Shown here: positions 237 through 62,699 of the stretch, piece after piece
Position numbering within the stretch: position 1 is the stretch's first letter
How the letters are laid out: each line of letters starts with the position of its first letter
IMG/VR virus record: IMGVR_UViG_3300032245_001860
Span: 248,001 to 312,000 of that record
Reading direction: 5' to 3' (one strand)
Length of the DNA: 64,000 nucleotides
Translations under genes and position numbers: made by a program
The notes under the pieces: generated by a model
What the model was told of the DNA's origin: nothing
Seen by the model: the letters and a program-made list of their open reading frames with translations, nothing else
The model's database searches: none

Positions 237-517
237 GACATATCTGGATGAGACAAATTTTCTTCAAAGCTATTTATAATGCTTCTAAGAGTTTCGGCAC
301 TTAAATTGCCTTTATCGTCAAATTTAATATTGTTGTGTTGTGCAAGATCAAATAAAATTCCACCAATAAATTCATTCATTGCTTGATCTGCATTTATGGA
401 AGATTTTGATTCTTCTTTATCTTCAATGGGTATTTCTGATATAATATCATCAGCTTCATTTTCTAAGCCCATTTCTGCCAATTCTTGAGCTATTTTTATC
501 AAAGCATAAGTATTCAT
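233..517 (-). CDS. hypothetical protein carrying the shared leader motif
   Basis: N-terminus LIKIAQELAEMGLENEADDI matches the motif in ORFs at 53321, 53864, 54607, 56170 and 58585. Confidence 0.7.
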   Translation of the reverse strand: MNTYALIKIAQELAEMGLENEADDIISEIPIEDKEESKSSINADQAMNEFIGGILFDLAQHNNIKFDDKGNLSAETLRSIINSFEENLSHPDMS

Positions 518-23848: not shown

Positions 23849-23850
23849 TT

Positions 23851-42961: not shown

Positions 42962-43414
42962 ATGAGTTGGTATAGATTAGCACAGCAACCAGACAATTGG
43001 TCTAATATCTTAAAAGGCAATCAGCCAGGTACAGCATCGAACCCAAAAGGAATTCTTGTGAGTTATGCTGATTATCAAAAATTAAAATCTTTTGGTACTG
43101 GTAGTGGACCTATTAGTGTTTTAGATAAAGATACAAATCAATATGTAACTGTTATACATGGTGGCTTAACTCCTGACAATAAATTTGGTTTTGCAGATGG
43201 CAAGGGTGGATTTGTTTTTCCTAATGAAGAAGATGACTGGGCTACTAAATTAGGCGTAAATCCATCAAACTTCATAGTTTCTTGTTATGAAGGGTCTGCA
43301 AATGCTGGAGACTTTAAAGCTGCTACAAACTACCAAGGCAAACTTGAAATGTCAATGCCTCAGACAGTAACAGACACTACTCAAGATGTTAGAATTAACG
43401 TTTCAGGTGCATAA
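42962..43414 (+). CDS. hypothetical protein, possible caspase-fold His-Cys peptidase
   Basis: GAGGT upstream; VTVIHG ... FIVSC dyad-like spacing; starts MSWYRLAQ. Confidence 0.55.
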   Translation: MSWYRLAQQPDNWSNILKGNQPGTASNPKGILVSYADYQKLKSFGTGSGPISVLDKDTNQYVTVIHGGLTPDNKFGFADGKGGFVFPNEEDDWATKLGVNPSNFIVSCYEGSANAGDFKAATNYQGKLEMSMPQTVTDTTQDVRINVSGA

Positions 43415-49253: not shown

Positions 49254-49281
49254 ATTATATTGTTATTGATATTTTTGTCAA
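49254..49281 (-). promoter_or_regulatory. sigma70-type promoter for the large RNA
   Basis: TTGACA (49281-49276), 16-nt spacer, TATAAT (49259-49254) on the minus strand. Confidence 0.75.
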
Positions 49282-49997
49282 TCACCTTTTGAAGGGTCAT
49301 ATTCAAAAATCAATGGCCATAAATTTTCAAATGTTCCTGACATTCTGATACCTGTCCCAATTGGATTATTAGCAATCACAATCAATTTATATAAACATGC
49401 CCACCATTCGTAAGGCTTATTTATAATCTTTGAAACTGGTACAATATGTTGAGCTCCAGAACCCCATTGATACGATCTTCCTTTATATGGGATATCCATC
49501 ATTTTGCAAACAAAAGAAACTAAAGCGAGATCAGTTGCTACAATTTCAGATTCTTCAATATGATCGTCATAAATTAATGGGCATGTTATTTTTTCTTCTG
49601 GGCAAAATATTTTTCTGATTAAAATATTATAAAAACCATTTATGTAAAAATCATCATCATTTGCAAATTCAAAAGGATTACAATGTGTGGTTAGAGGCAT
49701 ATAAGTGTCTTTATTAGCATTATTTATTATATCAATTGTATTTGCACAATGGTCAAATGGGTGTCCTTGTAAAAAAATTACAGTTTCTAATAAATGCAAT
49801 TGATCATAATTTTCTAAAATACCACGAAGAAATGCTTCTGCTTCTCGCCCAATATTAGGAGAATCTATTTTATGAATTTCAGGCCAAAGCCAGTCCTCTC
49901 CATGATTATATATAATATAATATGTCTTGAGATTTTTTATCCATTGAATGTCTTCATCATATCTGCATACTATAGTTAGCTTTTTGTAGTCTTGCAT
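49278..49997 (-). CDS. DUF3431 family protein
   Basis: IVCRYDEDIQW..PNIGREAEAF..FLQGHPFDH..GAQHIV..FENLWP; ATG 49997 preferred over TTG 50015. Confidence 0.8.
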   Translation of the reverse strand: MQDYKKLTIVCRYDEDIQWIKNLKTYYIIYNHGEDWLWPEIHKIDSPNIGREAEAFLRGILENYDQLHLLETVIFLQGHPFDHCANTIDIINNANKDTYMPLTTHCNPFEFANDDDFYINGFYNILIRKIFCPEEKITCPLIYDDHIEESEIVATDLALVSFVCKMMDIPYKGRSYQWGSGAQHIVPVSKIINKPYEWWACLYKLIVIANNPIGTGIRMSGTFENLWPLIFEYDPSKGD

Positions 49998-50043
49998 ATA
50001 TTTTTTATAAAACAATTGGCATTTGTATTTTGGATATATGAAA

Positions 50044-50457
50044 TTAATTTGCTTTCCATTTATCCGGAATATATATTTTTACAATATCTGATGACCACTT
50101 TTTTCCTTCATCACCACCATATAATCGCCATTCCCAGTAAGTAGGATTTTCATCATTTTTAGAGTGGTTGAATCGTTTTTCAAAAGTATATTTATGAATC
50201 TTCAATACATCTTTTAATTCAAGGTATGATCTATTTGATAAGTCTCTTGCTATATCATAATCTTTTTGAGACCCAAAATTAATCTTTCCTAAGCGTTTTT
50301 TGTAAGCTTCTTCTGCTATTTTTCTTATTTCATAAGGAATAAAAATTTTCTTATCCATTATTGATTCTTTTGAAGCAAATTTGTTAAAAACTGTATCAGA
50401 TAATTTAAATAGCTGTTTTGAATCAAGAATTTTGCAGAGGTTTATAATTTTGTTCAT
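50044..50457 (-). CDS. leader-motif protein with conserved phage domain ending WRLYGGDEGKKWS
   Basis: N-terminal IINLCKILDSKQLFKLSDTVFNKFAS; C-terminal domain resembles the W-x-L-W/Y-G-G-D-x-G-x-x-W module of phage head-associated proteins. Confidence 0.65.
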   Translation of the reverse strand: MNKIINLCKILDSKQLFKLSDTVFNKFASKESIMDKKIFIPYEIRKIAEEAYKKRLGKINFGSQKDYDIARDLSNRSYLELKDVLKIHKYTFEKRFNHSKNDENPTYWEWRLYGGDEGKKWSSDIVKIYIPDKWKAN

Positions 50458-50505
50458 ACAGTATATATATATAATAAAATAAAAAAATACCTTCGGAGGT
50501 ACAAA

Positions 50506-51138
50506 ATGCCGATAACACTTTCAGATGCTCTCATATTTACTCTTGCTTGGGAAGGAGGATTTACTAATCACCCTCTTGACCCTGGTGGAGCTACAAATTT
50601 TGGTATCATTCAAACAAGATATGATGAATATCGCAAATTCAAAAAACTGAAAACCCAAACAGTAAAGCTTATTACCAAAGAAGAATACACAGAAATTTAT
50701 GATAAATATTATTGGGATCCAGTAAGAGCTCAATATTTGTTGGGACCTTTAGGGCTTGCATTATTTGATACAGCAGTAAATTTGGGTGTAGGTGGAGCTC
50801 TAAGCAGATTGCAGTCTTCCATGAAATTGCCTGTCACTGGTAAATGGACCCAAAACATAAGTGACAAAATACATGATGCTAATCAATTGGATATAGCAAT
50901 CAATATTTGTAAGCTAAGAATAGCAAAAAGATATGCAAGGGTCAAACAAAGACCAGATCAAGTTGTCTTCTTAAAAGGATGGCTCAATAGAGATAATGCT
51001 TTATTGAGAAAAGTCAAATCTTTAGGTGGAATTTCTGTTTTGTCTATTGAGCCAGGTTACGATTTTGATTTAGAAGAGATTACTAATGAGTTTAATACAG
51101 ATCTTCTGAAGGAACTGGAAGCTTTTGATTTGGATTAG
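50506..51138 (+). CDS. glycoside hydrolase family 108 endolysin
   Basis: EGGFTNHPLDPGGATNFGI, IYDKYYW, FDTAVNLG, FLKGWLNR; GGAGG upstream. Confidence 0.92.
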   Translation: MPITLSDALIFTLAWEGGFTNHPLDPGGATNFGIIQTRYDEYRKFKKLKTQTVKLITKEEYTEIYDKYYWDPVRAQYLLGPLGLALFDTAVNLGVGGALSRLQSSMKLPVTGKWTQNISDKIHDANQLDIAINICKLRIAKRYARVKQRPDQVVFLKGWLNRDNALLRKVKSLGGISVLSIEPGYDFDLEEITNEFNTDLLKELEAFDLD

Positions 51139-51826
51139 GTTGGTGATTCCAAATAGATAGCCACACTCTTTCGCAATATGCAGCTATTTCATCACCTGGA
51201 TTTATAGACTTCCAATCTTTAATCAATGTGTAAAATTCAGTCCACCATTCAAAATTTTTAGATTTGATATATGATGTGGGCACTATATATTGCGCTCCAG
51301 CAGAATAGGTAATTTCCTTAGAAGATAAATCTAATCCTAACATTTGGGCAAAAAATACAGAAGTGCTAATTTCTAAACCTCTGTCATCATTTAAGTCTAT
51401 GTCTCCAGACAATTTTGTAAATGTTGCTGAAGGGGCAAATTGCTTTCTGAAAAGTTTACATATTGTTGCAGCTTCAAAATTAAAGTACGCTCTGTCACTT
51501 GGAAGTTTGTAAGTGACCATTGAATTTGCTAAAAATACAATTTCATTTGAATTGTATTCGTTTATGGATTCGACTGGGTCATCATCATGGTCAAAAGGAT
51601 TCCCTTGAATGAAAATAACACAATCATAATCATCCAGCATTTCATAGCATTCGACAATAGCTCTTGCGTAAGTTTCACACTCTCTGCCATAATTTTCAAT
51701 ATCAACTCTTGGAATATCTTCCCAAGGCCAATTTTCGCCTTTATTATAGATTAATATATCTCCATCTAATTCTTTAGACCATTCAATGTCCTCATTGTAT
51801 CTTGCTATAATTGTTAATTTTTTCAT
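51092..51826 (-). CDS. DUF3431 family protein
   Basis: IIARYNEDIEW..YNKG..ENYGRE..FIQGNPFDH..GAQYIV..ERVW; start 51826 in an ATGA overlap. Confidence 0.8.
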   Translation of the reverse strand: MKKLTIIARYNEDIEWSKELDGDILIYNKGENWPWEDIPRVDIENYGRECETYARAIVECYEMLDDYDCVIFIQGNPFDHDDDPVESINEYNSNEIVFLANSMVTYKLPSDRAYFNFEAATICKLFRKQFAPSATFTKLSGDIDLNDDRGLEISTSVFFAQMLGLDLSSKEITYSAGAQYIVPTSYIKSKNFEWWTEFYTLIKDWKSINPGDEIAAYCERVWLSIWNHQPNPNQKLPVPSEDLY

Positions 51827-52536
51827 AAGTCTGAGTGTTGCCAAATTAATGGCCAAATCCTTTCTAAAATATATGTCCAAGCAATTTCATTCTTTTCTTT
51901 GCACAAATAATAAAATAAGTAATGAAGATTTTTCCACCATTCTAATGATTTGTTGGTAATTAAAAACGAGGGAACTGTGTATTGTGCCCCAACAGCCCAA
52001 TAATTATCTTTATCTTGATGATCTAATCCCAAGATTGTACACATTGTCACATTGTCTAAAAACCAATTTTTATTTGGTTCTTGATTTGTCACAGTGTTAG
52101 TATTCAAATCTAATTTTTGATATTTAGGAATAAATTCTTCATTCAAGTGATCTAAGTTCAGCATGCAATTTATTATGGAAGGATGAATATTGAATATTCT
52201 TCTATTGTCATTGTAAATATCTCTATTAATTGAATTAGACAAAGCAAGTATTTCATTTTTTTCATTATTGTTGATCATTTGAATAATATCTGGGCAATGA
52301 TCAAAAGGATTTCCTTGCACAAAAGATATCAAATCATAATCTTTGAAAACTTCATAAAATTCAATAACGGCTCTGACAAAAGTTTCACCTTCTCTGCCAT
52401 AATTTTCAATGTTTATTCTGGGAATATTTTCATAAGGCCAATCATCACCTTTATTATAAATAACAATATCTCCAGACAATTCTTTAGACCATTCAATGTT
52501 TTCATTGAATCTTGCAATAATTGTTAGCTTTTTCAT
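51823..52536 (-). CDS. DUF3431 family protein
   Basis: Same motifs; start 52536 in an ATGA overlap. Confidence 0.8.
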   Translation of the reverse strand: MKKLTIIARFNENIEWSKELSGDIVIYNKGDDWPYENIPRINIENYGREGETFVRAVIEFYEVFKDYDLISFVQGNPFDHCPDIIQMINNNEKNEILALSNSINRDIYNDNRRIFNIHPSIINCMLNLDHLNEEFIPKYQKLDLNTNTVTNQEPNKNWFLDNVTMCTILGLDHQDKDNYWAVGAQYTVPSFLITNKSLEWWKNLHYLFYYLCKEKNEIAWTYILERIWPLIWQHSDL

Positions 52537-53246
52537 AAGTCTTTGTGATCCAAAATTAGAGGCCAAATACGTTCTAATGCATATGTCCAAGATTCAATTT
52601 GTTTATATTTGGAAATATATTCGAAAATCATATGCAAATTTTCCCACCATTGTTTACTTTTATACTTAATATTTTTTATTGGTACTATATATTGACCACC
52701 ATTAGCCCATTCAACAATCTTATTTTGATAATCTATATCTAATATAGAGCACAATCCCATGGTTTCTTCAAATAAAAAGAAATCTGTGTTTGATTGATTT
52801 CTACTTAATTCATTTGGATTGCAGTAATCAATCTTTGATTTGAATGACTTATCTTCAATTTGAAGTAAAATATTTATGATTGAAAAATGTTTACCATTGA
52901 TGAAGTCATCTGACGGGTATTGGTCTTTAGAAACAAAATCAGATATTTTTACAATAGAGTTCTTGAATGAAAAATTTATAACTTTTTTGAAATCTTTGCA
53001 ATGCTCTTGTGGATTACCTTGCAAAAAAACTACATTGTCATAATGGTCTAAATTTTCATAAAATTCTATGATAGCCCTGACAAAAGTTTCACCTTCTCGG
53101 CCATAGTTTTCAGTATCTATTCTTGGTATATCTTTCCATGGCCAATCTGTGCCTTTATTATAGATGACAATATCTCCATCTAAATCTCTTGCCCATTTAA
53201 TATCTTCATTATATCTGGCAACTATAATCAAGTTTTTGGGACTCAT
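52533..53246 (-). CDS. DUF3431 family protein
   Basis: Same motifs; TAAAAT 6 nt upstream of ATG. Confidence 0.8.
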   Translation of the reverse strand: MSPKNLIIVARYNEDIKWARDLDGDIVIYNKGTDWPWKDIPRIDTENYGREGETFVRAIIEFYENLDHYDNVVFLQGNPQEHCKDFKKVINFSFKNSIVKISDFVSKDQYPSDDFINGKHFSIINILLQIEDKSFKSKIDYCNPNELSRNQSNTDFFLFEETMGLCSILDIDYQNKIVEWANGGQYIVPIKNIKYKSKQWWENLHMIFEYISKYKQIESWTYALERIWPLILDHKDL

Positions 53247-53264
53247 GAAATTATTTTACAAGAA

Positions 53265-53291
53265 AGGTGACTGTCAATTTATCTGTAAATA
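53265..53291 (+). promoter_or_regulatory. candidate phage promoter AGGT-N16-GTAA
   Basis: Same spaced motif recurs at 55756, 56114 and 60535, each intergenic and upstream of a + strand gene. Confidence 0.45.
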
Positions 53292-53320
53292 TATAAGTAA
53301 CAGTACTCAGGAGTTTTATA

Positions 53321-53854
53321 ATGTCAGAAAAAAGAATTATATTATGCTCACAATTGATTGAACAAGCTAATAGTTTTGATTCAAAAGGTGATCATGAAAA
53401 AGCAGATCAACTTACAAAAGTAGCCAAACAATTATCTAATAAAGAAATATCAGTTCGTGAAGCTCTGAATTTTGGAAGAATGTTAGGCGGTCTTACTGGT
53501 GGACTTGCTGGGTATGCTTTGGCTCCAATGTTTGCAAGACAAAAGGGTGGATTGCAATATTCAATGCAAATTCTTCAAAAGAAATACCCACAATTATATA
53601 CCCAACTATTACCTGAGTTTACAGCAATACAAAATATTGAAAATTCTATACAGCCAAGAAAAAATGCTCTTACTACAAAGGTAATGCAAGCAATTCAATC
53701 AGGTTCATATACAAACACACCTGTTGCAACTCCTCCTCCTGTACAAGCAACCACAACTCCAGCTGCAACCACAACTCCTGCACCAGTAGCAGCTTCTGCT
53801 GTAAAAGTCAATCCAGTTGTCACTCCTGCTAATATTGCTGTAACAAAAGGTTAA
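53321..53854 (+). CDS. leader-motif protein with Pro/Ala/Thr-rich tail
   Basis: LIEQANSFDSKGDHEKADQLTKVAK leader; GGAG upstream; glycine-zipper-like hydrophobic segment GRMLGGLTGGLAGYAL. Confidence 0.75.
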   Translation: MSEKRIILCSQLIEQANSFDSKGDHEKADQLTKVAKQLSNKEISVREALNFGRMLGGLTGGLAGYALAPMFARQKGGLQYSMQILQKKYPQLYTQLLPEFTAIQNIENSIQPRKNALTTKVMQAIQSGSYTNTPVATPPPVQATTTPAATTTPAPVAASAVKVNPVVTPANIAVTKG

Positions 53855-53863
53855 GGTAAATTA

Positions 53864-54607
53864 ATGGATAAAGTCGCATTTTGTAAAAATCTTGAAGAAG
53901 TTGCAAACAAACTTGATGATTTAGGTCTTCATAAACAAGCAGATATATGTACTGAAGACATCAAGAGAGTTGCATCTGGAGAAATGTCAACAAGAGAAGC
54001 TTTCATTAAATTAAAACTTCCTAATGTTGGCAAAATGCTTGGTTTAGGAAATTTTGAAAAATCTTTTTTGAGACCATTTTACAAACCATTCCTATTGGCA
54101 GCTGCTGTTTATTATGGTGGACCTCAATTATTGAAAGCTTTGAAACTTGATCCAAAAATATTAACAAATCGCCAGCTATTCAATCAGAAATTAACTCAAA
54201 TGTTTGGCAAGCAAGGGGCTGCAATAGCTGCAAATATAGCCAAAGATGTTCAAACTAAGATGCAACAAAAAGCTGTTCAATTGGGTGCACAGGCAGTTTC
54301 TGGTGTGGCAGGTCAACAATCTGGTGCTGTAGACCCTTCAAGAGCAGCACAACAACCTGGACAACAAGCTCAACAACCATCATACACTAACATGCAGATG
54401 GATGTTCAACAAGTTTATCAACAATATCTTACAAATAAGAGTCAAACAGCTCCACAAATGCAAGCGGTTATAAATAATAAGAAAACTGCAATTTACAATT
54501 ATATGACTGGAACTATGAAAGCTACTCCGCAAGTTGCACAACAACAAGCTACTACATTTGAAAAATTAGTAAAATCCTATTTAAATAACGCAGGTTTAAA
54601 AATATAA
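53864..54607 (+). CDS. leader-motif protein, Gln/Ala-rich
   Basis: LEEVANKLDDLGLHKQADICTEDIKRVAS leader; SxREA shared with previous ORF. Confidence 0.75.
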   Translation: MDKVAFCKNLEEVANKLDDLGLHKQADICTEDIKRVASGEMSTREAFIKLKLPNVGKMLGLGNFEKSFLRPFYKPFLLAAAVYYGGPQLLKALKLDPKILTNRQLFNQKLTQMFGKQGAAIAANIAKDVQTKMQQKAVQLGAQAVSGVAGQQSGAVDPSRAAQQPGQQAQQPSYTNMQMDVQQVYQQYLTNKSQTAPQMQAVINNKKTAIYNYMTGTMKATPQVAQQQATTFEKLVKSYLNNAGLKI

Positions 54608-55173
54608 TGGAAAAAGCATTAGAATATTTAGCAGATTTAGCTAATGAATTAGATTCACAAAACGCACATAGATTAGCAGATAGCATTACAGCTCAATTAA
54701 AACAAGCATCAAAAGATTGGGACCATGAATACGATATGGTCAGAAATCAAATGGAAACAGCTGAAAGAGCTATTGATGGTATTGAAGATGTTATTGGTGA
54801 AGATGGTGAAGGCAATTTGATGGCTTGGGTACAGTCAAAGATTACTAACGCTGTCGAAATGTTAGATGGAGTTTCTGACTATTTACAAAGCCAACATAAA
54901 ACAGCTTCAGACAAAAATAAAGGTAAGAAATTAGGTAAACCTTTCCGTACTCCTGGTGGTCCTAAGAAATTTTCTGTTTATGTTAAAAATGACAAAGGCA
55001 ATGTAGTCAAGGTTAACTTTGGAGATCCTAATATGGAGATCAAGAGAGATGACCCAAAAAGAAGAAAAAACTTTAGAGCAAGACACAATTGCGATAATCC
55101 AGGACCTCGCACCAAAGCAAAATATTGGTCATGCAAGATGTGGTCAAAAAAGAATGTATCTGATTTGACTTAG
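54607..55173 (+). CDS. leader-motif protein with acidic helical domain and basic His/Cys phage module
   Basis: LADLANELDSQNAHRLADSI..KQAS; AWVQSKIT domain; KKFSVYVK..VNFGD..FRARHNC..YWSC module common in large phages. Confidence 0.8.
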   Translation: MEKALEYLADLANELDSQNAHRLADSITAQLKQASKDWDHEYDMVRNQMETAERAIDGIEDVIGEDGEGNLMAWVQSKITNAVEMLDGVSDYLQSQHKTASDKNKGKKLGKPFRTPGGPKKFSVYVKNDKGNVVKVNFGDPNMEIKRDDPKRRKNFRARHNCDNPGPRTKAKYWSCKMWSKKNVSDLT

Positions 55174-55204
55174 AAAAAAAAGAGGACTGTAAAGTCCTCT
55201 TTTT
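55174..55204. terminator. bidirectional intrinsic terminator
   Basis: aaaaagaggact-gtaa-agtcctcttttt between convergent genes. Confidence 0.85.
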
Positions 55205-55207
55205 AGT

Positions 55208-55714
55208 TTAAACTATATAAAAATCCCATTCATCGTAATCATTTTTTGCAAAATTGTTCATCATTGCATGAAAACTATATTTTGGACATCTTGGCTTAGA
55301 AAGTAATTTCATATTAGCTTGATCTAATGTTTTCCAAGCTTTATGTCCATTGCATCTTTTGCAGCAAGTAACTAAGTTTTCCCAAGTATGAGTTCCACCT
55401 AAATGTCTTGGATAAACGTGGTCTAATGTAAGTTCGTTATTTCTAACACCGCAATATTGACATGTGTAATTGTCTCTGTTATAAATGCCTAATCTTGAAA
55501 CTTTATATTCTCTTGTGAATTTTCTTTTTACTTGATAATTTAGTCTAAGAACTGTAGGTCTTTGGATGAATTCACCACTGATTGTTAATAAAAAATCATC
55601 TTCTAAAATATGTAAAGGTTCAGCTTTACCTTTTAGCATCATATTCACTGCTTTTCTCATTGTGCAAATAGACAATGGTTCATAATCAGCATTGAGCAAT
55701 AAGACTCGATTCAT
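55208..55714 (-). CDS. HNH endonuclease (McrA-like)
   Basis: VLLLNADYEPL, RDNYTCQYCG, LTLDHVYPR..GG..WENLVTCCKRCN. Confidence 0.92.
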   Translation of the reverse strand: MNRVLLLNADYEPLSICTMRKAVNMMLKGKAEPLHILEDDFLLTISGEFIQRPTVLRLNYQVKRKFTREYKVSRLGIYNRDNYTCQYCGVRNNELTLDHVYPRHLGGTHTWENLVTCCKRCNGHKAWKTLDQANMKLLSKPRCPKYSFHAMMNNFAKNDYDEWDFYIV

Positions 55715-55755
55715 AATTCAATTATACCTCCAATGTTTTCTGCAAGCTTATTTGT

Positions 55756-55783
55756 AGGTACTAAAATCATAATTATGTAAAAT
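55756..55783 (+). promoter_or_regulatory. candidate phage promoter AGGT-N17-GTAA
   Basis: AGGT 55756-55759, GTAAAAT from 55777. Confidence 0.4.
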
Positions 55784-55800
55784 TATTTTTGAGGTAAATT

Positions 55801-56109
55801 ATGAACTTAGATACATTTAATTTCAACGACACAATAGAGTCAGAAACCAGACCCGTACTTGTTAAATTTTGGGCATCTTGGTGTGGTCCCTGCAAAGCTT
55901 ATGCCCCAACCTTTGAAAAATTTGCAGAAGAAAATCCTGATGTTGCTTGTTTCTCTGTAGATTGTGAAGAAAGTAAAGATTTAGTAGAAGAGTTTCACAT
56001 TATGTCTATACCTGTAACTTTACTTTTTAAAAATGGTGAAAATGTAACTCAAAAACAAGGCAAATTGACAGCAAATGATCTAAGCCAATTAGTAGCTGAG
56101 CACAAATAA
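55801..56109 (+). CDS. trxA: thioredoxin
   Basis: FWASWCGPCK active site, SIPVT cis-Pro loop, FKNG. Confidence 0.92.
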   Translation: MNLDTFNFNDTIESETRPVLVKFWASWCGPCKAYAPTFEKFAEENPDVACFSVDCEESKDLVEEFHIMSIPVTLLFKNGENVTQKQGKLTANDLSQLVAEHK

Positions 56110-56113
56110 TAAT

Positions 56114-56141
56114 AGGTTTTATAACCCTATATTTGTAATAT
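56114..56141 (+). promoter_or_regulatory. candidate phage promoter AGGT-N17-GTAA
   Basis: AGGT 56114-56117, GTAATAT from 56135. Confidence 0.45.
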
Positions 56142-56169
56142 ATTTAGTATTACTCCCAAGGATTGTCAA

Positions 56170-57702
56170 ATGGATAAAAAAATATTAGATAACTTGAATG
56201 AAATTTCAATGGTTTTTGAAGATTTAGGTATGGATAAGCAAGCAGATATTGTTAATGAAATTTTTCTTAAAGTCGCTAAAAAGAAAGCTAAAAAGAAGAA
56301 TGTCCCAACCAATCCTTCTTTGTGGTCAGAATGTAAAGCTTGGGCTAAAAGAACATTTGATGTATATCCTTGCGTACCATTAGATTCTATGGCACTAACT
56401 AAAAAAGGTTGGGCTGAATATTCTGATTTGAATATTGGGGATGAAATTCTTACTTACAATCAAAAGATAGATAAACTTGAATGGAAACCTATTATTGATC
56501 TACATTTCTACGAAGATGCTCCTACTTTAAGCTTAAAAAAATTGCAAACAAATTTTAAAGTAAGGTGTACTCCTGATCACAAGTGGGTTTTGAAAACATA
56601 TAATTCAAAATATCCTGACAGTTTAGTACAAGCAAAAAATATTACAAAAAGAATGAGTCTAAAAACAGCTGCTGAAATAGTTGATGACGTAAACGAAAAT
56701 TTAAATTTATCTAATTGGAGAAAAGGTGACGATTGGGTTGAAAATGTCTTAAAAATGTCAAAAACTCAATTAGAAGCTTTTTTTGCAGCTGGTATTGTTT
56801 ATGATGGCAATGATAAAGGTTTGTCATCATTGAATAGAAGCACTTATGGTTTTTCTCAGAAAAATATAAATCATGGTGAAGCTATGGAAATTGCTGCTGT
56901 ACTTTTAGGATACAGAGTTTCGTTTGTTCAGAAAATGCACAATATGGAAATGAAATCATGGACATTTATCAAACGTGATTCTGAAAGCACTGGCAATCTT
57001 ATTATTGAAGAAGATTTAAATTGTGATGTTTGGTGCCCTCAAACTGAAAACAATACTTGGGTCATGAAACAAGGAAGAATTATTACCATTACTGGAAATA
57101 GTGCCTACGCCAATGGTGCTGCAGCCAAAAGATATAAATCAAAGGGCGGCGGATGGAAAAAAGCAAGCTCTGATTCTAACATGAGATTAGCTCAGGAAGT
57201 TACAGAAACACCAATCACTTCTTTTAATCTTCCTGGTGGCGAATCTGATCAAGCTTTTGAAAAAAATCCACAATCAATATATCAACAAGCTATCAATCAA
57301 ATTAAGAATTTAATTGTTTCAAATAAAAGAAAAGATGCTAATGATGTGTTTTCATATTATTTTAATGGCACAGATTTAAGTCCAGCTCAAAAAACAGCAT
57401 TGCAAAATCAATACAATTCTATTTTGGATAGATTTACAAGCAAAGACAAAGACTTTAATTTATCTAATCCTATGGCTCAACAATACCTATTAGAAGAAGA
57501 CACAAAAGCAAATACTTATGTAGCTAATTTTATCAAGAGATTAGGAATACCCAAGGCTCAAATAACTAATAATTCAAAAGCATTCAGTGATATCTCAAAA
57601 TTGATATCAACGATTAAGGATATTAATATCAGATACAAAGCTATTGATGTCCTTAAGGGTATTGTAAATATGAATTCTCAAACCTCAAGAGTAAAACCAT
57701 AA
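56170..57702 (+). CDS. leader-motif protein with intein-split basic module (DUF5872-like)
   Basis: Leader LNEISMVFEDLGMDKQADIVNEIFLKVA; removing the intein restores PTNPSLW..K..AKRTFDVYP/SAYANG..AKRYKSKGGGW. Confidence 0.8.
   Translation: MDKKILDNLNEISMVFEDLGMDKQADIVNEIFLKVAKKKAKKKNVPTNPSLWSECKAWAKRTFDVYPCVPLDSMALTKKGWAEYSDLNIGDEILTYNQKIDKLEWKPIIDLHFYEDAPTLSLKKLQTNFKVRCTPDHKWVLKTYNSKYPDSLVQAKNITKRMSLKTAAEIVDDVNENLNLSNWRKGDDWVENVLKMSKTQLEAFFAAGIVYDGNDKGLSSLNRSTYGFSQKNINHGEAMEIAAVLLGYRVSFVQKMHNMEMKSWTFIKRDSESTGNLIIEEDLNCDVWCPQTENNTWVMKQGRIITITGNSAYANGAAAKRYKSKGGGWKKASSDSNMRLAQEVTETPITSFNLPGGESDQAFEKNPQSIYQQAINQIKNLIVSNKRKDANDVFSYYFNGTDLSPAQKTALQNQYNSILDRFTSKDKDFNLSNPMAQQYLLEEDTKANTYVANFIKRLGIPKAQITNNSKAFSDISKLISTIKDINIRYKAIDVLKGIVNMNSQTSRVKP
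56371..57099 (+). mobile_element. intein (243 aa, degenerate LAGLIDADG remnant)
   Basis: Block A CVPLDSMALTKKGW, block B CTPDHKW, block F DVWCPQT, terminal TGN followed by Ser+1; AFFAAGIVYDG resembles one LAGLIDADG motif. Confidence 0.88.
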
Positions 57703-58001
57703 TGGCATTTCAAAAAGATCAAGAGTTAGACAGTGGATTTACTGGAAACTATTGGAGATTGTCTGCTGTAAATGTTTACTGTGAAGGCGATCCAGCAGTT
57801 TCTATCAGTATGTTTTTATATAAAGATAGAAATGCCAGATTGCAAGGAAAATCATCAATATCAGATATGTTGATTCAAATTCCACTATCATCTATTGATT
57901 CGACATTCTCATATGATTTTAGAGCTTGTATCTATAACAGATTGAAACAATTGGAATATTGGCAAGATGCAATAGATGTTATTGAAGAAGATGGTTCATA
58001 A
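57702..58001 (+). CDS. small probable virion/tail-associated protein
   Basis: SGxxGNYWR...ARLxGKSS...FSYDFRACxYN; paralog of next ORF. Confidence 0.7.
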   Translation: MAFQKDQELDSGFTGNYWRLSAVNVYCEGDPAVSISMFLYKDRNARLQGKSSISDMLIQIPLSSIDSTFSYDFRACIYNRLKQLEYWQDAIDVIEEDGS

Positions 58002-58013
58002 GGAAATAAAAAA

Positions 58014-58583
58014 ATGGCTTTTGAATTAAATAGAGATTTACCCTCAGGTGTATCAGGAAATTATTGGAAGATTAGCTCTGCATTAGTTGCTTGTAGTACA
58101 GATTATCCAACTTGTGATGTTTATTTAGAATTGTTTTTGACAAGACAAGCAAGATTAGATGGGAAATCATCATTGCTGACACAAGTTGTAGGAGTTCCAT
58201 TAGCAATAGTAGATATGTCATTCTCATATGATTTCAGAGCTTGTTTATATAATACTATAAAGTCATTTCCTGAATGGACATCCGCTGTAGATATATTTGA
58301 TGACCCTAATCACGTTCCTGTTGCTAATAATGTAAATTTGGTCACCGATTTTGAAACTGCTAAAAATATTACTTTTTCAGCATATGACAATTTCAATGCT
58401 CCTATTACAATCAGCGTTGTAGATCAGCCAACTAATGGAGTAATCACAGAAAGCAATGGAGTATTTACTTACACTCCTAATGCTGGTTACTCAGGTTCTG
58501 ATCTTGCTACATACAAGGCATCAAATAGTCAATTTGATAGTACTCCGGCAAATATTAATATCACAGTAAATCCAGGTGCATAA
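58014..58583 (+). CDS. paralog of the previous ORF fused to an Ig-like (Big_9/cadherin-like) domain
   Basis: C-terminal PVANN...QPTNG...FTYTPNAGYSGSD..TYKAS...ANINITV. Confidence 0.8.
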   Translation: MAFELNRDLPSGVSGNYWKISSALVACSTDYPTCDVYLELFLTRQARLDGKSSLLTQVVGVPLAIVDMSFSYDFRACLYNTIKSFPEWTSAVDIFDDPNHVPVANNVNLVTDFETAKNITFSAYDNFNAPITISVVDQPTNGVITESNGVFTYTPNAGYSGSDLATYKASNSQFDSTPANINITVNPGA

Positions 58584-58584
58584 T

Positions 58585-59121
58585 ATGGAAAAAGAATCAA
58601 AGTGGACACAAAAATATAAAGATTCTATCGATTGCAGCAAACCACAAAAAGGCTTCAGTCAAAGAGCCCATTGCCAAGGAAAAAAGAAAAAGAAAAAATC
58701 TAAGGCATCTGTTTTGGAAACCTTGAATAAGATAGCAATTCAGCTTGAAAATTCTGGTAAGTTTTCATTAGCATCAGAAGTCAATGACGTTTTTATTAAG
58801 GTAGCAAATAAATTCAAACCAGAATATAAAGTTCCTTTTCCTATGAATCTTGATGACGCTTTAAACAATTATGATTCAAGCAATTATGAAGTTGATGTTG
58901 AAGGCGATTGGGAAGAAACTGAGCCTATTTCAGATTTTAGAGAAGAAGCTTCGGATGATTTACTTCATTCACCAGCAGCAGTCGATGATAATCACTTAAT
59001 TTTCTATAACGAAGATGAAGATCATGTTGAAGTAATGAATATGGTTCCTAAACATCATTTAGATAGTTTACATAAAAATCCAAGCAAACAAACTAAATTC
59101 ATAAAAAGAGCCGAAGACTAA
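58585..59121 (+). CDS. protein with basic Cys/His module, internal leader motif and acidic tail
   Basis: KWTQKYKDSIDCSKP.KGFSQRAHC module, then LNKIAIQLENSGKFSLASEVNDVFIKVA; ATG 58585. Confidence 0.75.
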   Translation: MEKESKWTQKYKDSIDCSKPQKGFSQRAHCQGKKKKKKSKASVLETLNKIAIQLENSGKFSLASEVNDVFIKVANKFKPEYKVPFPMNLDDALNNYDSSNYEVDVEGDWEETEPISDFREEASDDLLHSPAAVDDNHLIFYNEDEDHVEVMNMVPKHHLDSLHKNPSKQTKFIKRAED

Positions 59122-59122
59122 A

Positions 59123-59143
59123 AAGGGGAGCAATGCTCCCCTT
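59123..59143. terminator. intrinsic terminator between convergent genes
   Basis: aaggggagc-aat-gctcccctt. Confidence 0.8.
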
Positions 59144-59144
59144 G

Positions 59145-59993
59145 TTATTTATTTCTAATCAATAGTTCAGTTGCTGGTTTTGCTTCATAACCATCATCTG
59201 TCTTCTTTCTTCTTCCTGCTGTGTAAGTAACAGGGAATTTATCCACTAAAAGACCAGTATTATCAAAGAAACCATCTTCTATATCTCTGTTGCATAAAAA
59301 CACGTCAGATTGCTTATTTGACCTTACAAAATTCAGTAGTTTATTTTGATCATCATCTGAAAACTCTTGACCGTAAGAAGTAAACGATCCTCTGTATGGT
59401 GGATCTAAAAATATAAAATGTTCAGGCTCATCTACAGCATAACTTACTGCATCAGACCAATCACCAGAAAGCACTGATGCAGTTTGCAATTTGTCATGCC
59501 ACCATTCAACTACTTCTTTTTCATACACTTTATCTTTTTGATTTAGTAAACCAGATGGCGTTCCGTATCTATTGTTTGTATTGATATTAAGTTGATAGAT
59601 ACCATTAAAACCTGTTTTCATTAAAAAATAAAGTACAGCTGCTTCTTTGACAGTATCCCAAGCTGCATAATCATAAGCATGTTGATGTCTTAAAGAATAA
59701 TAGTAATCTTTTCTACCAGCTTTATCTAATGGTAAATATTCTTTTGACATTTCATCCATAAAATTAATGAAATCTTCGTGATTATCTCTGATCGTTTTGT
59801 ATATACGAACAATATCACTGTTGACATCATTGATGATAAGATGCTTTGGATTATAATGTTCAACTACATGAATGAACATTGCTCCACCGCCAAAAAATGG
59901 TTCTATATAAGTTTTGACCGATTTTGGCATGAATGGCTTATAATGCTTAAGCATTTTATTCTTACCGCCAGCCCAAATAAATAAAGGTTTCAT
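59145..59993 (-). CDS. Dam-family (D12 class) N6-adenine DNA methyltransferase
   Basis: KPLFIWAGGK, YIEPFFGGGA, IINDVN, FLDPPY. Confidence 0.93.
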   Translation of the reverse strand: MKPLFIWAGGKNKMLKHYKPFMPKSVKTYIEPFFGGGAMFIHVVEHYNPKHLIINDVNSDIVRIYKTIRDNHEDFINFMDEMSKEYLPLDKAGRKDYYYSLRHQHAYDYAAWDTVKEAAVLYFLMKTGFNGIYQLNINTNNRYGTPSGLLNQKDKVYEKEVVEWWHDKLQTASVLSGDWSDAVSYAVDEPEHFIFLDPPYRGSFTSYGQEFSDDDQNKLLNFVRSNKQSDVFLCNRDIEDGFFDNTGLLVDKFPVTYTAGRRKKTDDGYEAKPATELLIRNK

Positions 59994-60517
59994 TAATTTT
60001 CCTTACCCAAATACGCCATCATTATACTTTCAATTTCTTGTTCTGTAAATCCATTCTCATTCAGAAAAAATACACAGCTTAATGGATCTAACTTTTTCAT
60101 TGTCTCTGAAAACTTATGTAATATTTTTCCTTCACAACATCCACTTCCAGATAAAAATGTAATATATTTTACTTGTGGATTTAACATTTTGCAAAGTATA
60201 TAGTTTTTGCCCCATCTTTCTATTGCATTCCCATCTTGGCCTTGATGCTTGCTTTCAAATACATAACAAAGATTTCTCTGCTTGCCTCTTGGTTGATCAA
60301 ACCAAAATCCGCCATCAGGTACACAACCTAAACTAACATCAAGATTGACAAATTCTGGAAGTTTTCTTTTGCCATTTTTATCGTTGTAATGTTCTTTTTC
60401 AAAATAATATTTGCTGCGTAGAGATGATGCAATTTTGTTCATTGCTTTTTTAGTGTTATCATCTAAGCTTTTTGATTCACGGGTAGTTGCGATATCACCC
60501 CTGCCACCTTTACTCAT
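59993..60517 (-). CDS. compact EcoRI-like PD-(D/E)xK restriction endonuclease
   Basis: VPDGG...FESKHQG..GNAIERWGKN parallels EcoRI PDGG...EAKHQG...GNAIERSHKN; TAATG-coupled to the methylase. Confidence 0.75.
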   Translation of the reverse strand: MSKGGRGDIATTRESKSLDDNTKKAMNKIASSLRSKYYFEKEHYNDKNGKRKLPEFVNLDVSLGCVPDGGFWFDQPRGKQRNLCYVFESKHQGQDGNAIERWGKNYILCKMLNPQVKYITFLSGSGCCEGKILHKFSETMKKLDPLSCVFFLNENGFTEQEIESIMMAYLGKEN

Positions 60518-60534
60518 AAAAAATACCTCAAAGT

Positions 60535-60562
60535 AGGTGAAAAATATACACCCCTGTAAAAG
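60535..60562 (+). promoter_or_regulatory. candidate phage promoter AGGT-N17-GTAA
   Basis: AGGT 60535-60538, GTAAAAG from 60556. Confidence 0.45.
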
Positions 60563-60595
60563 TATATCATAAGTTTAAATATAAAGGCAATACTT

Positions 60596-61399
60596 ATGGA
60601 TAAATGGCGAATAATTGAAGCTAAAAATCATGGTGGATTGGATGATTGGTTTAACAAAGAAAAATGGGTAGATGTCTCTCGTCCTAAAAAGAAAGGCAAA
60701 GGATATGAGCCTTGTGGACGTGGCGATACTTCAAAAGGAAAAAAACCAGTTTGCACTCCTGCTAATAAAGCTAAGAATCTTACCGAAAAAGAACGCAAAA
60801 ACAGAATTCGCCAAAAAAGAAAAAAAGAAAAAGAACCAAATCCGGACAAGAAGCCAAATAATACAACATATTCTCCTGGCGCTGGTGGAAAATCAAATGT
60901 TTCTGAAACCAACAATATAAGATTTGTTGGAAGTATAATTCCATTATCGGAATTACGTCCAAAACAACCTAAATTTGTTAAAATTGCAATCTTAGGCGAA
61001 GAAGATGAAATCCCATCTACTGAAATATCTGGAATGTTTTCAGAACAAGATGATAAAATATCAGCTATGGCAGAACAAATTCAAGAAGAAGCATTTACAA
61101 AACTTGCTGAAATACTATCTCATCAAATGGGTTTAAGTGGTCCTGACGCTCCTTCAATAAGCTCTATAAAGTATTATGAAAATCCAGTTCAAGAAGAAAT
61201 GACTGAACAAGAATACCTTAGATTTATACGTCATAAAAGTGCTGTAATTCGTAGCATGCATAAACAAGCTAAAGAAAATTCAGATTCTAAAATGTATGAA
61301 ATTACATACAAAATGGCAGTCAATGGTTCTAATCCTTTTAATTATTCGGATATTGTAAAAGTAGTTAGGGAAGTTTTAGAAAATTCAAATTCCAATTAA
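60596..61399 (+). CDS. protein with basic DUF5872-like module and acidic C-terminal domain
   Basis: GGLDDWF.KEKWVD...CGR...PVCTP...RQKRKKE; domains separated by KFVKIA. Confidence 0.7.
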   Translation: MDKWRIIEAKNHGGLDDWFNKEKWVDVSRPKKKGKGYEPCGRGDTSKGKKPVCTPANKAKNLTEKERKNRIRQKRKKEKEPNPDKKPNNTTYSPGAGGKSNVSETNNIRFVGSIIPLSELRPKQPKFVKIAILGEEDEIPSTEISGMFSEQDDKISAMAEQIQEEAFTKLAEILSHQMGLSGPDAPSISSIKYYENPVQEEMTEQEYLRFIRHKSAVIRSMHKQAKENSDSKMYEITYKMAVNGSNPFNYSDIVKVVREVLENSNSN

Positions 61400-61418
61400 A
61401 ACGAATAAAAAGGATTAC

Positions 61419-62090
61419 ATGGAAACTATTTTTATTATTAAGAATTTTAAAAGAACAAAAGATTGTGTCTTGACTATTAAGAGTATTAGGCATTTTTGTG
61501 ATAATGAAATACATATTCTACATTTATTTAATGAAAGTATTGACGAATACAAAACATCAGAACTTTCATATAATGAAGAATTAATGAGTATGGGTGTAAT
61601 CCAATTTTTTGGTAAAACAAAGTATAATTGTGGTCCAGGTTGTTTAAGTCCAGTGAATGGTTTGTATTATTCTGAGGGATTGAATTATTGTTCTGAAATT
61701 TTTAAGGGTCAAAACAAAAAAGTAATATTTTTAGATGAAAATCATTTTTTCACTACAGGTGAAACAATTAAATTTTTATTAGATAATGATTATGATTTTG
61801 CTTATGGAACTTGGGGCGATCCTACACTTAGTGGTGAAGATGAAAATACGTTGCCTAATTGCTCATTATTAGGTTTTAATTTTTTTAATTTAAAACATTT
61901 ATTTCCTATCCAAGAAGTCATAATGTTTTGTGAACCTCTAATCAGTCAAGAAATTCTTGCTAAAATCACAGACAAATCTCGTATTTATAAAATACCAACC
62001 AGAATAAGAGACAATTATTGTGGAGATGGTTTTTGGACTAATGATTATGATCAAATGTATGATGCTTTGCAAAAAAGTGGAATCGTATAA
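61419..62090 (+). CDS. putative GT-A fold glycosyltransferase
   Basis: N-terminal IFIIKNFKR...TIKSIR strand-helix and VIFLDEN in the DxD-like position. Confidence 0.5.
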   Translation: METIFIIKNFKRTKDCVLTIKSIRHFCDNEIHILHLFNESIDEYKTSELSYNEELMSMGVIQFFGKTKYNCGPGCLSPVNGLYYSEGLNYCSEIFKGQNKKVIFLDENHFFTTGETIKFLLDNDYDFAYGTWGDPTLSGEDENTLPNCSLLGFNFFNLKHLFPIQEVIMFCEPLISQEILAKITDKSRIYKIPTRIRDNYCGDGFWTNDYDQMYDALQKSGIV

Positions 62091-62117
62091 AAAAATATTA
62101 TTATAAGGAAAAATAAA

Positions 62118-62699
62118 ATGATCAAGTTTGCATCACATGTTATTGAAGTAGGAAAATTATTTCCTAAATCTGGCAAACAACAAAAGTTTGTCAAAGTTGC
62201 TATGGGGCCTGGATTATCTATGCTTGCTGGTGGTTTAGAAAAAGCTGTTGAACAGTTGGCTTCTAAACTTCATGAAAAATGGGCAGAAGGTTTTAGAGCT
62301 GGTGAAATGGCTAAGGGCAATGAAAACCCTACCAGAATGAAAGATGATGGTATGGGCGGACAGGTAGATATTCTTAATACATCCTATGCAGAATTACCAG
62401 CAAAATGGCAAGCAGAAAATAAAGCACAAGCAGAATCAGCCATTGGATTAGTAGCAAAAGATATGCCTGGAGCAATGGATAATCTTGAAAATTTAGCAGC
62501 TCAAGTTCACGAGCAATGGTTGTCAAGAAACTCCTGGGCTAAAGATGGTCCTTTAGGTGTTGCTTATTCTGAATTACCTGAAGAAGAGAAGCAAAAAGAT
62601 AGGGATGTTATTACTTCAGCTCATGAAATTCTTAGCCAAATGATGGGCGGAGAAGAAGATGTAATGCCTGAAGAAACTGAAGAACCAAGTGAATTTTAA
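62118..62699 (+). CDS. tandem RyR (ryanodine receptor repeat) domain protein
   Basis: LASKLHEKW...SYAELP..WQAENK and LAAQVHEQW...VAYSELPEEEKQKDR. Confidence 0.75.
   Translation: MIKFASHVIEVGKLFPKSGKQQKFVKVAMGPGLSMLAGGLEKAVEQLASKLHEKWAEGFRAGEMAKGNENPTRMKDDGMGGQVDILNTSYAELPAKWQAENKAQAESAIGLVAKDMPGAMDNLENLAAQVHEQWLSRNSWAKDGPLGVAYSELPEEEKQKDRDVITSAHEILSQMMGGEEDVMPEETEEPSEF

What the first reader, a model, noticed from the sequence alone, without database searches (positions are those of the whole stretch)
50044..62699. Shared ~30-aa leader ending in K/R-x-A fused to unrelated cargo domains: candidate virion-loading tag and protease system
Seen: a motif of roughly L-x2-h-A-x2-L/F-D/E-x2-G-x4-A-D-x-h-x(1-6)-K/R-x-A occurs at the N-terminus of ORFs 233-517, 50044, 53321, 53864, 54607 and 56170, and internally in 58585, while the downstream parts are unrelated. 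Short K/R-x-A(S/Q) words also sit at apparent domain boundaries: RLAQ (42962, 56170), KTAS (54607), KFVKIA (60596), KFVKVA just before the RyR repeats (62118), RTAS (520-783) and possibly IKVS before the SOD core. Known: T4 internal proteins use an N-terminal capsid-targeting sequence removed by prohead protease gp21, and phiKZ head proteins are cut at short motifs by gp175; both cleave after Glu. Inference: this phage uses a portable leader and an Ala-specific cleavage site to load varied cargo into the head for delivery or DNA condensation.
Basis: partly seen in the sequence, partly recalled or inferred. Interest (0 to 1): 0.82.

Follow-up and report, generated by a model that had tools for sequence, protein, structure and literature searches.

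The report
Portable TPR-like tag on phage proteins
An uncultured 316-370 kb phage and its relatives put the same ~37-residue helical hairpin in front of dozens of unrelated proteins, which looks like an undescribed address tag, possibly for loading cargo into the virus head, although neither its destination nor any cleavage has been shown.

Summary
The shared leader is real. Five window ORFs (53321, 53864, 54607, 56170, 58576) pass a leave-one-out or independent-profile test. ORF 233 is a divergent member and 50044 a weak one.

A profile of the leader finds 242 protein clusters among 1.84 billion. At least 112 of the best 150 carry it at residue 1, on unrelated cargo. Conservation stops abruptly after V-M-K-[KR]-[LIV]-A.

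The leader resembles one kinesin-light-chain-type TPR hairpin (hhalign 96%; AlphaFold pLDDT above 90). It occurs in same-strand arrays of 2-9 genes in AT-rich jumbo-phage contigs. This genome has at least 14 copies. None was found in 185,579 cellular genomes, cultured phages, Pfam, PHROGs or the PDB.

Recognisable cargo includes two kinds of peptidoglycan hydrolase and a J-domain. Shorter N-terminal tags (M-W-Y-[KR]-x-A; ...K-F-V-K-V-A) sit on other proteins and end the same way.

Virion loading, by analogy with the T4 capsid-targeting sequence, is the best-supported reading but is untested. Cleavage after Ala is only a possibility, and C-terminal copies argue that docking is the core function. 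No head or protease gene was reached.

The parts
53864..53974 (+). Type-1 leader (37 aa, MDKVAFCKNLEEVANKLDDLGLHKQADICTEDIKRVA) of ORF 53864-54607. The cargo has a hydrophobic segment and a Q-rich region.
   Evidence: Leave-one-out 28.2 bits. Independent profile 26.2 bits, E 4e-7. Coordinates checked.
53321..53425 (+). Type-1 leader (35 aa, ends TKVA) of ORF 53321-53854. The cargo has a Gly-zipper-like hydrophobic segment and a P/T/A-rich tail.
   Evidence: 16.4 bits; 23.5 bits.
54607..54708 (+). Type-1 leader (34 aa, ends LKQA) of ORF 54607-55173. The cargo is a helical middle part (phrog_32745) plus a DUF5754-like/phrog_7595 basic C-terminal module.
   Evidence: 13.3 bits; 16.1 bits. AlphaFold2: helix 2-17, turn, helix from 21, pLDDT 92-98 over residues 1-30.
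56170..56277 (+). Type-1 leader (36 aa, ends FLKVA) of ORF 56170-57702. The cargo is a small basic module split by an intein (56371-57099) plus a C-terminal domain.
   Evidence: Leave-one-out 20.9 bits. Independent profile only 8.0 bits. Intein-less homologue P0008 keeps the leader.
58702..58806 (+). Internal type-1 leader (aa 43-77 of ORF 58576-59121, ends FIKVA). It is preceded by a 40-aa basic Cys module and followed by acidic cargo. The ORF ends with a further KQTKFIKRA word (59092-59121).
   Evidence: 12.6 bits; 23.9 bits. Homologue P0095 has a second leader copy in place of the basic module.
419..517 (-). Divergent type-1 leader of ORF 233-517 (MNTYALIKIAQELAEMGLENEADDII...). It lacks the K-h-A end.
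   Evidence: Not recovered by leave-one-out. Scores 16.0 bits, E 6e-4, with the independent profile.
50374..50457 (-). Probable truncated type-1 leader (28 aa, ends NKFA) of ORF 50044-50457.
   Evidence: Seen by eye. Found only by the profile that contains its own homologues P0025/P0060 (27.4 bits). Missed. This is the weakest member.
62118..62201 (+). Type-3 presequence (28 aa, MIKFASHVIEVGKLFPKSGKQQKFVKVA) of ORF 62118-62699. The cargo is a RyR domain.
   Evidence: F-x-K-[VI]-A is enriched 4 vs 0.3. A homologous presequence MIRFSSSEIPLSKIWKTDKPKFVKVA sits on unrelated cargo in L035:9421-9996. RyR domain: Pfam E 2e-7.
60917..60988 (+). Internal type-3 presequence (IRFVGSIIPLSELRPKQPKFVKIA, aa 108-131) of ORF 60596-61399. 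It lies between a basic N-terminal module (phrog_23735) and an acidic C-terminal half.
42962..42982 (+). Short N-terminal tag MSWYRLA of ORF 42962-43414. It is one member of the M-W-Y-[KR]-x-A class.
   Evidence: About 30 distinct proteins in related loci start with MWY[KR]xA. 30 of 55 WY[KR] words are at the N-terminus, and the codons vary synonymously.
50506..51138 (+). Untagged GH108 lysozyme, divergent neighbour of ORF 50044. It is given for contrast, because its homologues in related phages carry the leader or the MWY tag.
   Evidence: Pfam Glyco_hydro_108. L035:6060-6980 is leader plus GH108; L038:4068-4814 is MWYRTVIAQ plus GH108.

Best explanation
The ~37-residue leader is a self-contained TPR-like helix-turn-helix hairpin that works as a portable docking tag. 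By binding one conserved partner it recruits many otherwise unrelated accessory proteins to the same place. These include peptidoglycan hydrolases, a J-domain protein, small basic or acidic proteins and proteins with hydrophobic segments.

The most likely place is the interior of the assembling prohead, so that the cargo is packaged and delivered with the DNA, as with the T4 capsid-targeting sequence.

Shown:
- the tag exists, is modular, is under strong protein-level constraint and is predicted to be a hairpin;
- it is restricted to a clade of AT-rich jumbo phages;
- tagged genes form diversified arrays.

Inferred:
- that it binds a common partner;
- that the partner is in the head;
- that the conserved end h-h-[KR]-h-Ala, shared with the shorter tags, is a recognition and perhaps cleavage site.
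For: - Spread: 242 clusters with E<=1e-3 among 1.84e9 proteins. At least 112 of the best 150 have the tag at residue 1, on proteins of 39-489 aa.
- Boundary: column information is 1.1-5 bits through the tag and at most about 1 bit in the ten or so columns after the final Ala, with isolated later columns reaching 1.4.
- Cargo diversity: 52 cargo clusters among 95.
- Constraint: paralogue leaders within a locus are 63% identical, against 62% between loci, with near-saturated third codon positions. This means ancient copies under purifying selection, not gene conversion.
- Fold: hairpin with pLDDT 92-98; two discrete hairpins in P0095; hhalign to TPR units 96.3%.
- Arrays: 2-9 tagged genes per locus of 20 kb or less, across 34 IMG/VR loci from contigs up to 358 kb. 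This genome has at least 14.
- Distribution: absent from 185,579 species genomes.
- Cargo: the tag sits on a glucosaminidase and on a GH108 lysozyme, while the window has an untagged GH108 that could serve as endolysin. It also sits on a J-domain.
- Interchangeable tags: the same cargo types carry the alternative MWY tag.
- Precedent: T4 internal proteins are diverse proteins sharing only a CTS (PMC3012670). SPN3US head proteins carry N-terminal propeptides of 20-254 residues (PMC10052503).
Against: - No head, scaffold, portal or protease gene was seen near the arrays or in the ~115 kb of this genome that I read.
- The tag is four times longer than the T4 CTS and unrelated to it.
- Several cargoes have hydrophobic segments, and a J-domain or NUDIX enzyme is not an obvious virion passenger.
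- The tag has no match in cultured phages, so no virion proteome can be consulted.
- C-terminal and internal copies show that N-terminal position and cleavage are not obligatory.
Confidence: 0.4

Rival explanations
1. The hairpins bind each other. A lone TPR unit has two exposed faces, so tagged proteins could stack or bundle through their leaders into hetero-oligomers or a larger body. This could be an intracellular complex, or an inner-body-like core. Proteins with 2-3 copies would act as cross-linkers.
For: - The leader is TPR-like in sequence and predicted fold.
- Natural proteins carry two or three copies, at both ends or in tandem: P0006, P0011, P0019, P0044, P0058, P0095, P0115.
- The ~900-1000-aa paralogues next to the arrays carry a C-terminal copy.
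Against: - No multimer modelling was possible.
- Foldseek hits to TPR proteins are not significant (E >= 0.75, rmsd 7-8 A).
- This reading does not explain the 6-residue MWY tag or the shared h-h-[KR]-h-A end.
Confidence: 0.2
2. It is simply the conserved N-terminal domain of one large, old, expanding gene family whose C-termini were replaced by recombination. Examples would be host-takeover, anti-defence or exclusion proteins that all touch the same host target. No trafficking or processing would be involved.
For: - The genes sit in tandem arrays in accessory regions rich in homing endonucleases and methyltransferases.
- Near-identical leaders are followed by entirely different tails.
- Almost no cargo has a known domain.
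Against: - The cargo includes complete enzymes with their own activities: glucosaminidase, GH108 lysozyme and a J-domain.
- The same enzymes occur untagged or with a different tag. This fits an address label better than a functional domain.
Confidence: 0.2
3. The tags are stability or chaperone signals: N-terminal recognition motifs for a host AAA+ protease or chaperone. The pattern hydrophobic-hydrophobic-basic-hydrophobic resembles one class of ClpX N-terminal motif, as recalled from the literature. Such signals would time the life of accessory proteins.
For: - MWY[KR]h and VM[KR][KR]L fit a hydrophobic-hydrophobic-basic-hydrophobic pattern.
- J-domain genes lie beside or within the arrays.
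Against: - A degron does not need a conserved 37-residue folded hairpin.
- C-terminal copies do not fit an N-terminal degron.
- The resemblance rests on memory and was not tested.
Confidence: 0.08
4. The tagged genes are RiPP-like precursors: a conserved leader followed by a hypervariable core that is modified and released by cleavage after the leader.
For: - A conserved leader with a sharp boundary, many short products and some Cys-rich tails.
Against: - Cargo reaches 500-1000 aa and includes enzymes.
- The Cys motifs look like CPxCG zinc ribbons.
- No modifying enzyme or peptidase-transporter was found among the neighbours.
Confidence: 0.03

Closest known systems
T4 capsid-targeting sequence (CTS) of internal proteins IPI/II/III and Alt, removed by prohead protease gp21
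   Same: An N-terminal presequence is the only thing shared by a diverse, fast-evolving set of accessory proteins (PMC3012670). The genes lie outside the head module.
   Different: - Length is 37 residues against about 10, with no sequence similarity.
- Here it is a folded TPR-like hairpin, not a short helix.
- The boundary is [KR]-h-Ala, not L/I-x-Glu.
- The module also occurs C-terminally.
- Encapsidation and cleavage are unproven here.
N-terminal propeptides of phiKZ/SPN3US head and ejection proteins, cut by gp175/gp245 at A/S/G-x-E
   Same: A jumbo phage with many tagged proteins. Propeptides there span 20-254 residues (PMC10052503).
   Different: Those propeptides are not one conserved portable module, and the cleavage motif ends in Glu. 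No homologue of these proteins or proteases was seen here.
Tetratricopeptide repeat, kinesin-light-chain type (Pfam TPR_10/TPR_12)
   Same: The core L-N-x-I-A-N-x-L-D-x-x-G-x-[YHF]-x-E-A aligns with the TPR unit S-M-N-N-L-A-x-V-L-x-x-Q-G-K-Y-x-E-A (hhalign 96.3%). It is predicted as a helix-turn-helix.
   Different: - It is a single unit at a protein terminus, not an array.
- No Pfam TPR model reaches E 0.1 on the window leaders.
- The second half of helix B (T-x-V-M-K-R-L-A) departs from the TPR consensus.
P22 scaffolding-protein C-terminal helix-turn-helix and the HK97 protease C-terminal targeting peptide (recalled from the literature, not tested)
   Same: Small terminal helical elements that dock proteins to the inside of a procapsid and can carry foreign cargo.
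   Different: One protein each, not a multigene tag family. No sequence relation was tested.
Polymorphic toxin or effector loci (conserved N-terminal trafficking domain, variable C-terminus, cassette arrays)
   Same: The same architecture and array organisation, with C-terminal displacement.
   Different: Those are cellular secretion substrates. No secretion apparatus or immunity genes were identified here.

Membership tests
T4-type capsid-targeting sequence / prohead-protease propeptide | Short N-terminal presequence shared by otherwise unrelated proteins | tested here: met
T4-type capsid-targeting sequence / prohead-protease propeptide | Presequence ends at the protease motif (L/I-x-E in T4; A/S/G-x-E in phiKZ-like phages) | tested here: not met
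   The boundary consensus is K-[KR]-[LIV]-A, with Ala in 95/125 and Ser in 16/125. There is no Glu at P1.
T4-type capsid-targeting sequence / prohead-protease propeptide | Tagged proteins are present in virions with the tag removed | not testable with these tools
   There is no cultured relative and no proteome.
T4-type capsid-targeting sequence / prohead-protease propeptide | The genome encodes a prohead protease, and capsid or scaffold proteins carry the same site | tested here: inconclusive
   No head or protease gene lies in the window, L010, L025 or L045. About 200 kb of the genome was out of reach.
TPR repeat (Pfam clan TPR) | 34-residue helix-turn-helix with the small and hydrophobic consensus positions | tested here: met
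   hhalign 96.3%, E 1.7e-9 over 26 columns. The TPR units used had been picked up by the leader profile, so there is some selection bias. AlphaFold predicts a hairpin.
TPR repeat (Pfam clan TPR) | Tandem array of three or more units forming a superhelix | tested here: not met
   There is a single unit per protein in at least 112 of 150 hits. The rare 2-3 copies are separated by linkers.
TPR repeat (Pfam clan TPR) | Recognised by curated TPR models | tested here: not met
   No Pfam TPR hit at E<=0.1 on the window proteins. One TPR_2 hit at 8e-4 among 62 tagged proteins.
RiPP precursor leader | Short core peptide and adjacent modifying or processing enzymes | tested here: not met
   Cargo runs from a few residues to about 450 aa in the database hits (up to about 1000 aa in the related loci) and includes enzymes. 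Neighbours are HNH endonucleases and methyltransferases.

The most novel reading that the evidence does not exclude
A clade of uncultured 260-370 kb phages runs a cargo-addressing system of a new type. It uses a single TPR-like hairpin, plus minimal variants such as MWY[KR]xA and ...KFVKVA, all ending in hydrophobic-hydrophobic-[KR]-hydrophobic-Ala. The tag loads dozens of diversified effector proteins into the capsid for injection. It is removed by a maturation protease that cuts after Ala, a specificity closer to herpesvirus assemblin (recalled) than to the Glu-specific T4 and phiKZ enzymes.
Probability: 0.25. Interest if true: 0.85.

Novelty: new variant of a known kind. Interest (0 to 1): 0.68.

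Why it matters
If the tag is an address label, it marks a whole set of otherwise unannotatable proteins in huge phages as one functional class, probably delivered effectors. About a tenth of the genes in this window would belong to it.

It would also give a ready-made, sequence-defined handle for three things:
- finding the receptor;
- predicting virion content from sequence alone;
- loading foreign proteins into large capsids.

It would further show that a single TPR unit can act as a portable module. Even if the destination is not the head, a 37-residue element held at about 62% identity across ancient paralogues with unrelated cargo points to an important, unknown binding partner.

Tried and rejected
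- Cultured relatives: megablast of the region against cultured phages gave no match. tblastn of two leader variants gave none either, though such short queries have little power.
- Word-based search with the leader of 53864 found only itself and one close homologue.
The whole protein found only its own contig.
- A PDB profile search found nothing.
- A literature search for the motif strings found nothing relevant. The weak Pfam Amphi-Trp hit on 58576 (E 5.8e-5, below cutoff) led nowhere.
- Promoter comparison between tagged and structural genes was inconclusive, because there are too few intergenic regions.
- Walking the contig upstream by two look-ups reached an ATPase, PhoH, DnaJ, a 1951-aa protein and GyrB, but no head genes. 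I stopped there, since about 200 kb remained.
- The ~900-1000-aa neighbours with a C-terminal tag have no Pfam or PHROG hit and only weak Atlas leads.
- Conservation at the DNA level or by gene conversion is rejected. Synonymous sites differ, and within-locus copies are no more alike than between-locus copies.
- A phage-nucleus import signal was considered and set aside. Lysins and proteins with hydrophobic segments are unlikely nuclear cargo, and no nucleus-shell gene was seen. This was not tested.


Full report
**What the window is.** The window is positions ~248,001-312,000 of a 315,852-bp IMG/VR contig from a JGI metagenome. A 370,470-bp contig holds the same proteins. G+C is 34.8%. Positions 2.5-39 kb hold giant tail-fibre-like proteins and arrays of LamG-like paralogues. 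The finding lies in an accessory region with a GH108 lysozyme, DUF3431 paralogues, an HNH endonuclease, thioredoxin, a Dam methylase and a sigma factor. No cultured phage is close.

**The leader is real.**
- The seven sequences align as L-x2-h-A-x2-L-D-x2-G-x4-A-D...K-h-A.
- A profile of the seven finds nothing else in the six-frame translation above 5.8 bits.
- Leave-one-out recovers five copies (12.6-28.2 bits) as the best non-training hit. It misses ORFs 233 and 50044.
- A profile made only from 32 leaders of other contigs scores five window copies at 16-26 bits and 56170 at 8 bits. It misses 50044. Shuffled windows never exceed 9.2 bits.
- I therefore count five solid members, one divergent (233) and one probable truncated (50044).
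- Pfam and PHROGs have no family for the leader.

**It is a large family.**
- The profile search of 1.84 billion representatives gave 242 proteins at E<=1e-3.
- At least 112 of the best 150 carry the module from residue 1, in proteins of 39-489 aa.
- The consensus is M-N-K-[RK]-x-[IV]-[LI]-A-S-L-N-K-I-A-N-E-L-D-N-S-G-L-[HYF]-K-E-A-[DNS]-x-h-T-x-V-M-K-[KR]-[LIV]-A.
- Per-column information is 1.1-5 bits through this stretch and falls to about 1 bit or less in the columns immediately after the final Ala (Ala 95/125, Ser 16/125); a few isolated later columns reach 1.0-1.4 bits.
- Identical leaders are followed by wholly different tails. 95 cargo segments fall into 52 BLAST clusters.
- Only singletons carry a Pfam domain: FHA, ferritin-like and DUF5764.
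- About 25 further hits are long repeat proteins with a 42-residue period, which led to the TPR comparison.

**Fold.**
- hhalign of the leader profile against kinesin-light-chain-type TPR units gives 96.3% probability over 26 columns. Those units had been selected by the leader profile, so this comparison is somewhat biased.
- AlphaFold2 on ORF 54607 predicts helix 2-17, a turn and a helix from 21, with pLDDT 92-98 over residues 1-30. There the second helix runs on through K-Q-A into the cargo.
- In P0095, a homologue of ORF 58576 with two leaders, each leader is a discrete hairpin whose second helix ends 2-3 residues after K-h-A.
- Foldseek's top matches for that model are TPR domains, but none is significant.

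**Genomic setting.**
- The conserved leader retrieved 34 IMG/VR loci, in contigs up to 358 kb with 30-41% G+C. Each has 0-9 tagged genes, nearly all in same-strand tandem arrays. Other contigs show the same pattern.
- One locus (L025) is the same contig as the window, 210-270 kb away (window positions 1-64,000 against contig 21,209-41,325), and holds five more copies.
- The 20 kb upstream of the window hold three more. One is a leader-glucosaminidase. This genome therefore has at least 14.
- Neighbours are homing endonucleases (23 loci), methyltransferases, a pilin-like protein and ~1000-aa paralogues. There are no head genes.
- No copy was found in 185,579 species genomes.
- Leader copies within a locus are no more alike than copies between loci (63% vs 62% at the protein level). 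Third codon positions are near saturation, so the constraint acts on the protein.

**Position is not obligatory.** Internal copies often begin with M-N-K, which suggests fused neighbouring genes. C-terminal copies end 1-5 residues after the K-h-A position, for example ...LMKRIAK* and ...NILRKYNV* on proteins of 305 and 909-1004 aa. In the window, 58576 carries the leader after a 40-residue basic module.

**Other tags.**
- K-F-V-K-[IV]-A in 62118 and 60596 is the end of a separate ~24-28-residue presequence. It recurs on unrelated cargo in L035.
- A minimal M-x-K-F-[VI]-K-[VT]-A begins other proteins, including one in this genome.
- About 30 distinct proteins in these loci begin with exactly M-W-Y-[KR]-x-A, including window ORF 42962 and two in the upstream flank. 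Their codons vary synonymously.
- GH108 lysozymes occur with the long leader, with the MWY tag, or untagged. J-domains occur with either tag.
- The pentapeptide [FYWM][VILMY][KR][VILT]A is 9.5-fold enriched in the first 45 residues of 363 protein families (21 vs 8, Fisher p 7e-9). I defined the pattern after seeing the data.
- Generic [KR]xA is not enriched (102 vs 93 +/- 9).

**Interpretation.** A discrete, strongly constrained terminal hairpin on unrelated cargo, interchangeable with other short tags, is best read as a docking or address module for one conserved partner.

The T4 capsid-targeting sequence is the closest precedent. T4 internal proteins are described as a highly diverse set of defence proteins sharing only a CTS (PMC3012670). 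Jumbo-phage head proteins carry N-terminal propeptides removed at A/S/G-x-E (PMC10052503). Tagged peptidoglycan hydrolases alongside an untagged lysozyme fit virion-borne entry enzymes.

The destination is nevertheless unproven. Cleavage is a possibility only. Self-association of the hairpins, or a shared host target, remain serious rivals.

Noticed in passing
window 56371-57099 (within ORF 56170-57702): A 243-aa intein (starts Cys, ends ...ITGN followed by Ser) splits a small basic module. The homologue P0008 (264 aa) lacks it.
   Followed up: partly
window 42962-42982; L010:16195-16482, L010:17654-18187; about 30 proteins in L011-L044: An exact N-terminal tag M-W-Y-[KR]-x-A sits on diverse proteins (GH108 lysozyme, J-domain, NUDIX-like). 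Many of these genes have a TAGAAT/TATTATAT box 5-12 nt before the ATG and no Shine-Dalgarno sequence, which suggests leaderless mRNAs.
   Followed up: partly
window 43435-44055, 44790-45452, 49278-50015, 51092-51880, 51823-52590, 52533-53246: Six paralogues of a DUF3431-like protein are interleaved with the tagged genes.
   Followed up: no
window 18416-25250 and 34437-35168: An array of about ten LamG-like paralogues, all starting MG.x..P...D.L..Y.DA.N.RSYSGSG, lies within the tail-fibre region.
   Followed up: no
window 58576-58700, 60596-60916, 54900-55170; L004:2749-4875: The small basic Cys-containing modules of ORFs 58576, 60596, 54607 and 56170 recur together inside one 709-aa mosaic protein of Synechococcus phage S-SM2 (between gp16 and gp17). 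They also occur in Pelagibacter and Roseobacter phages, without the leader.
   Followed up: partly
window 44067-44108: The Fe/Mn superoxide dismutase has a ~30-aa N-terminal extension containing N-Y-I-K-L-S. This could be a Ser variant of the short tag.
   Followed up: no
L025:1-7185 (same contig, about 34-41 kb): Three adjacent ~900-1000-aa paralogues have no database match. At least one ends in a C-terminal copy of the leader, and homologues flank the arrays in other contigs.
   Followed up: partly
L045:18856-19521 (same contig): A 221-aa protein has N-terminal MKTVIKRIAQ, a Pro/Ala-rich linker and a C-terminal half leader.
   Followed up: no
window 59145-60517: A Dam-type methyltransferase lies directly beside a 174-aa protein of unknown function. 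This may be a restriction-modification-like pair.
   Followed up: no
L011-L044: A ~460-aa HNH homing endonuclease family is the commonest neighbour of the tag arrays (23 loci).
   Followed up: partly
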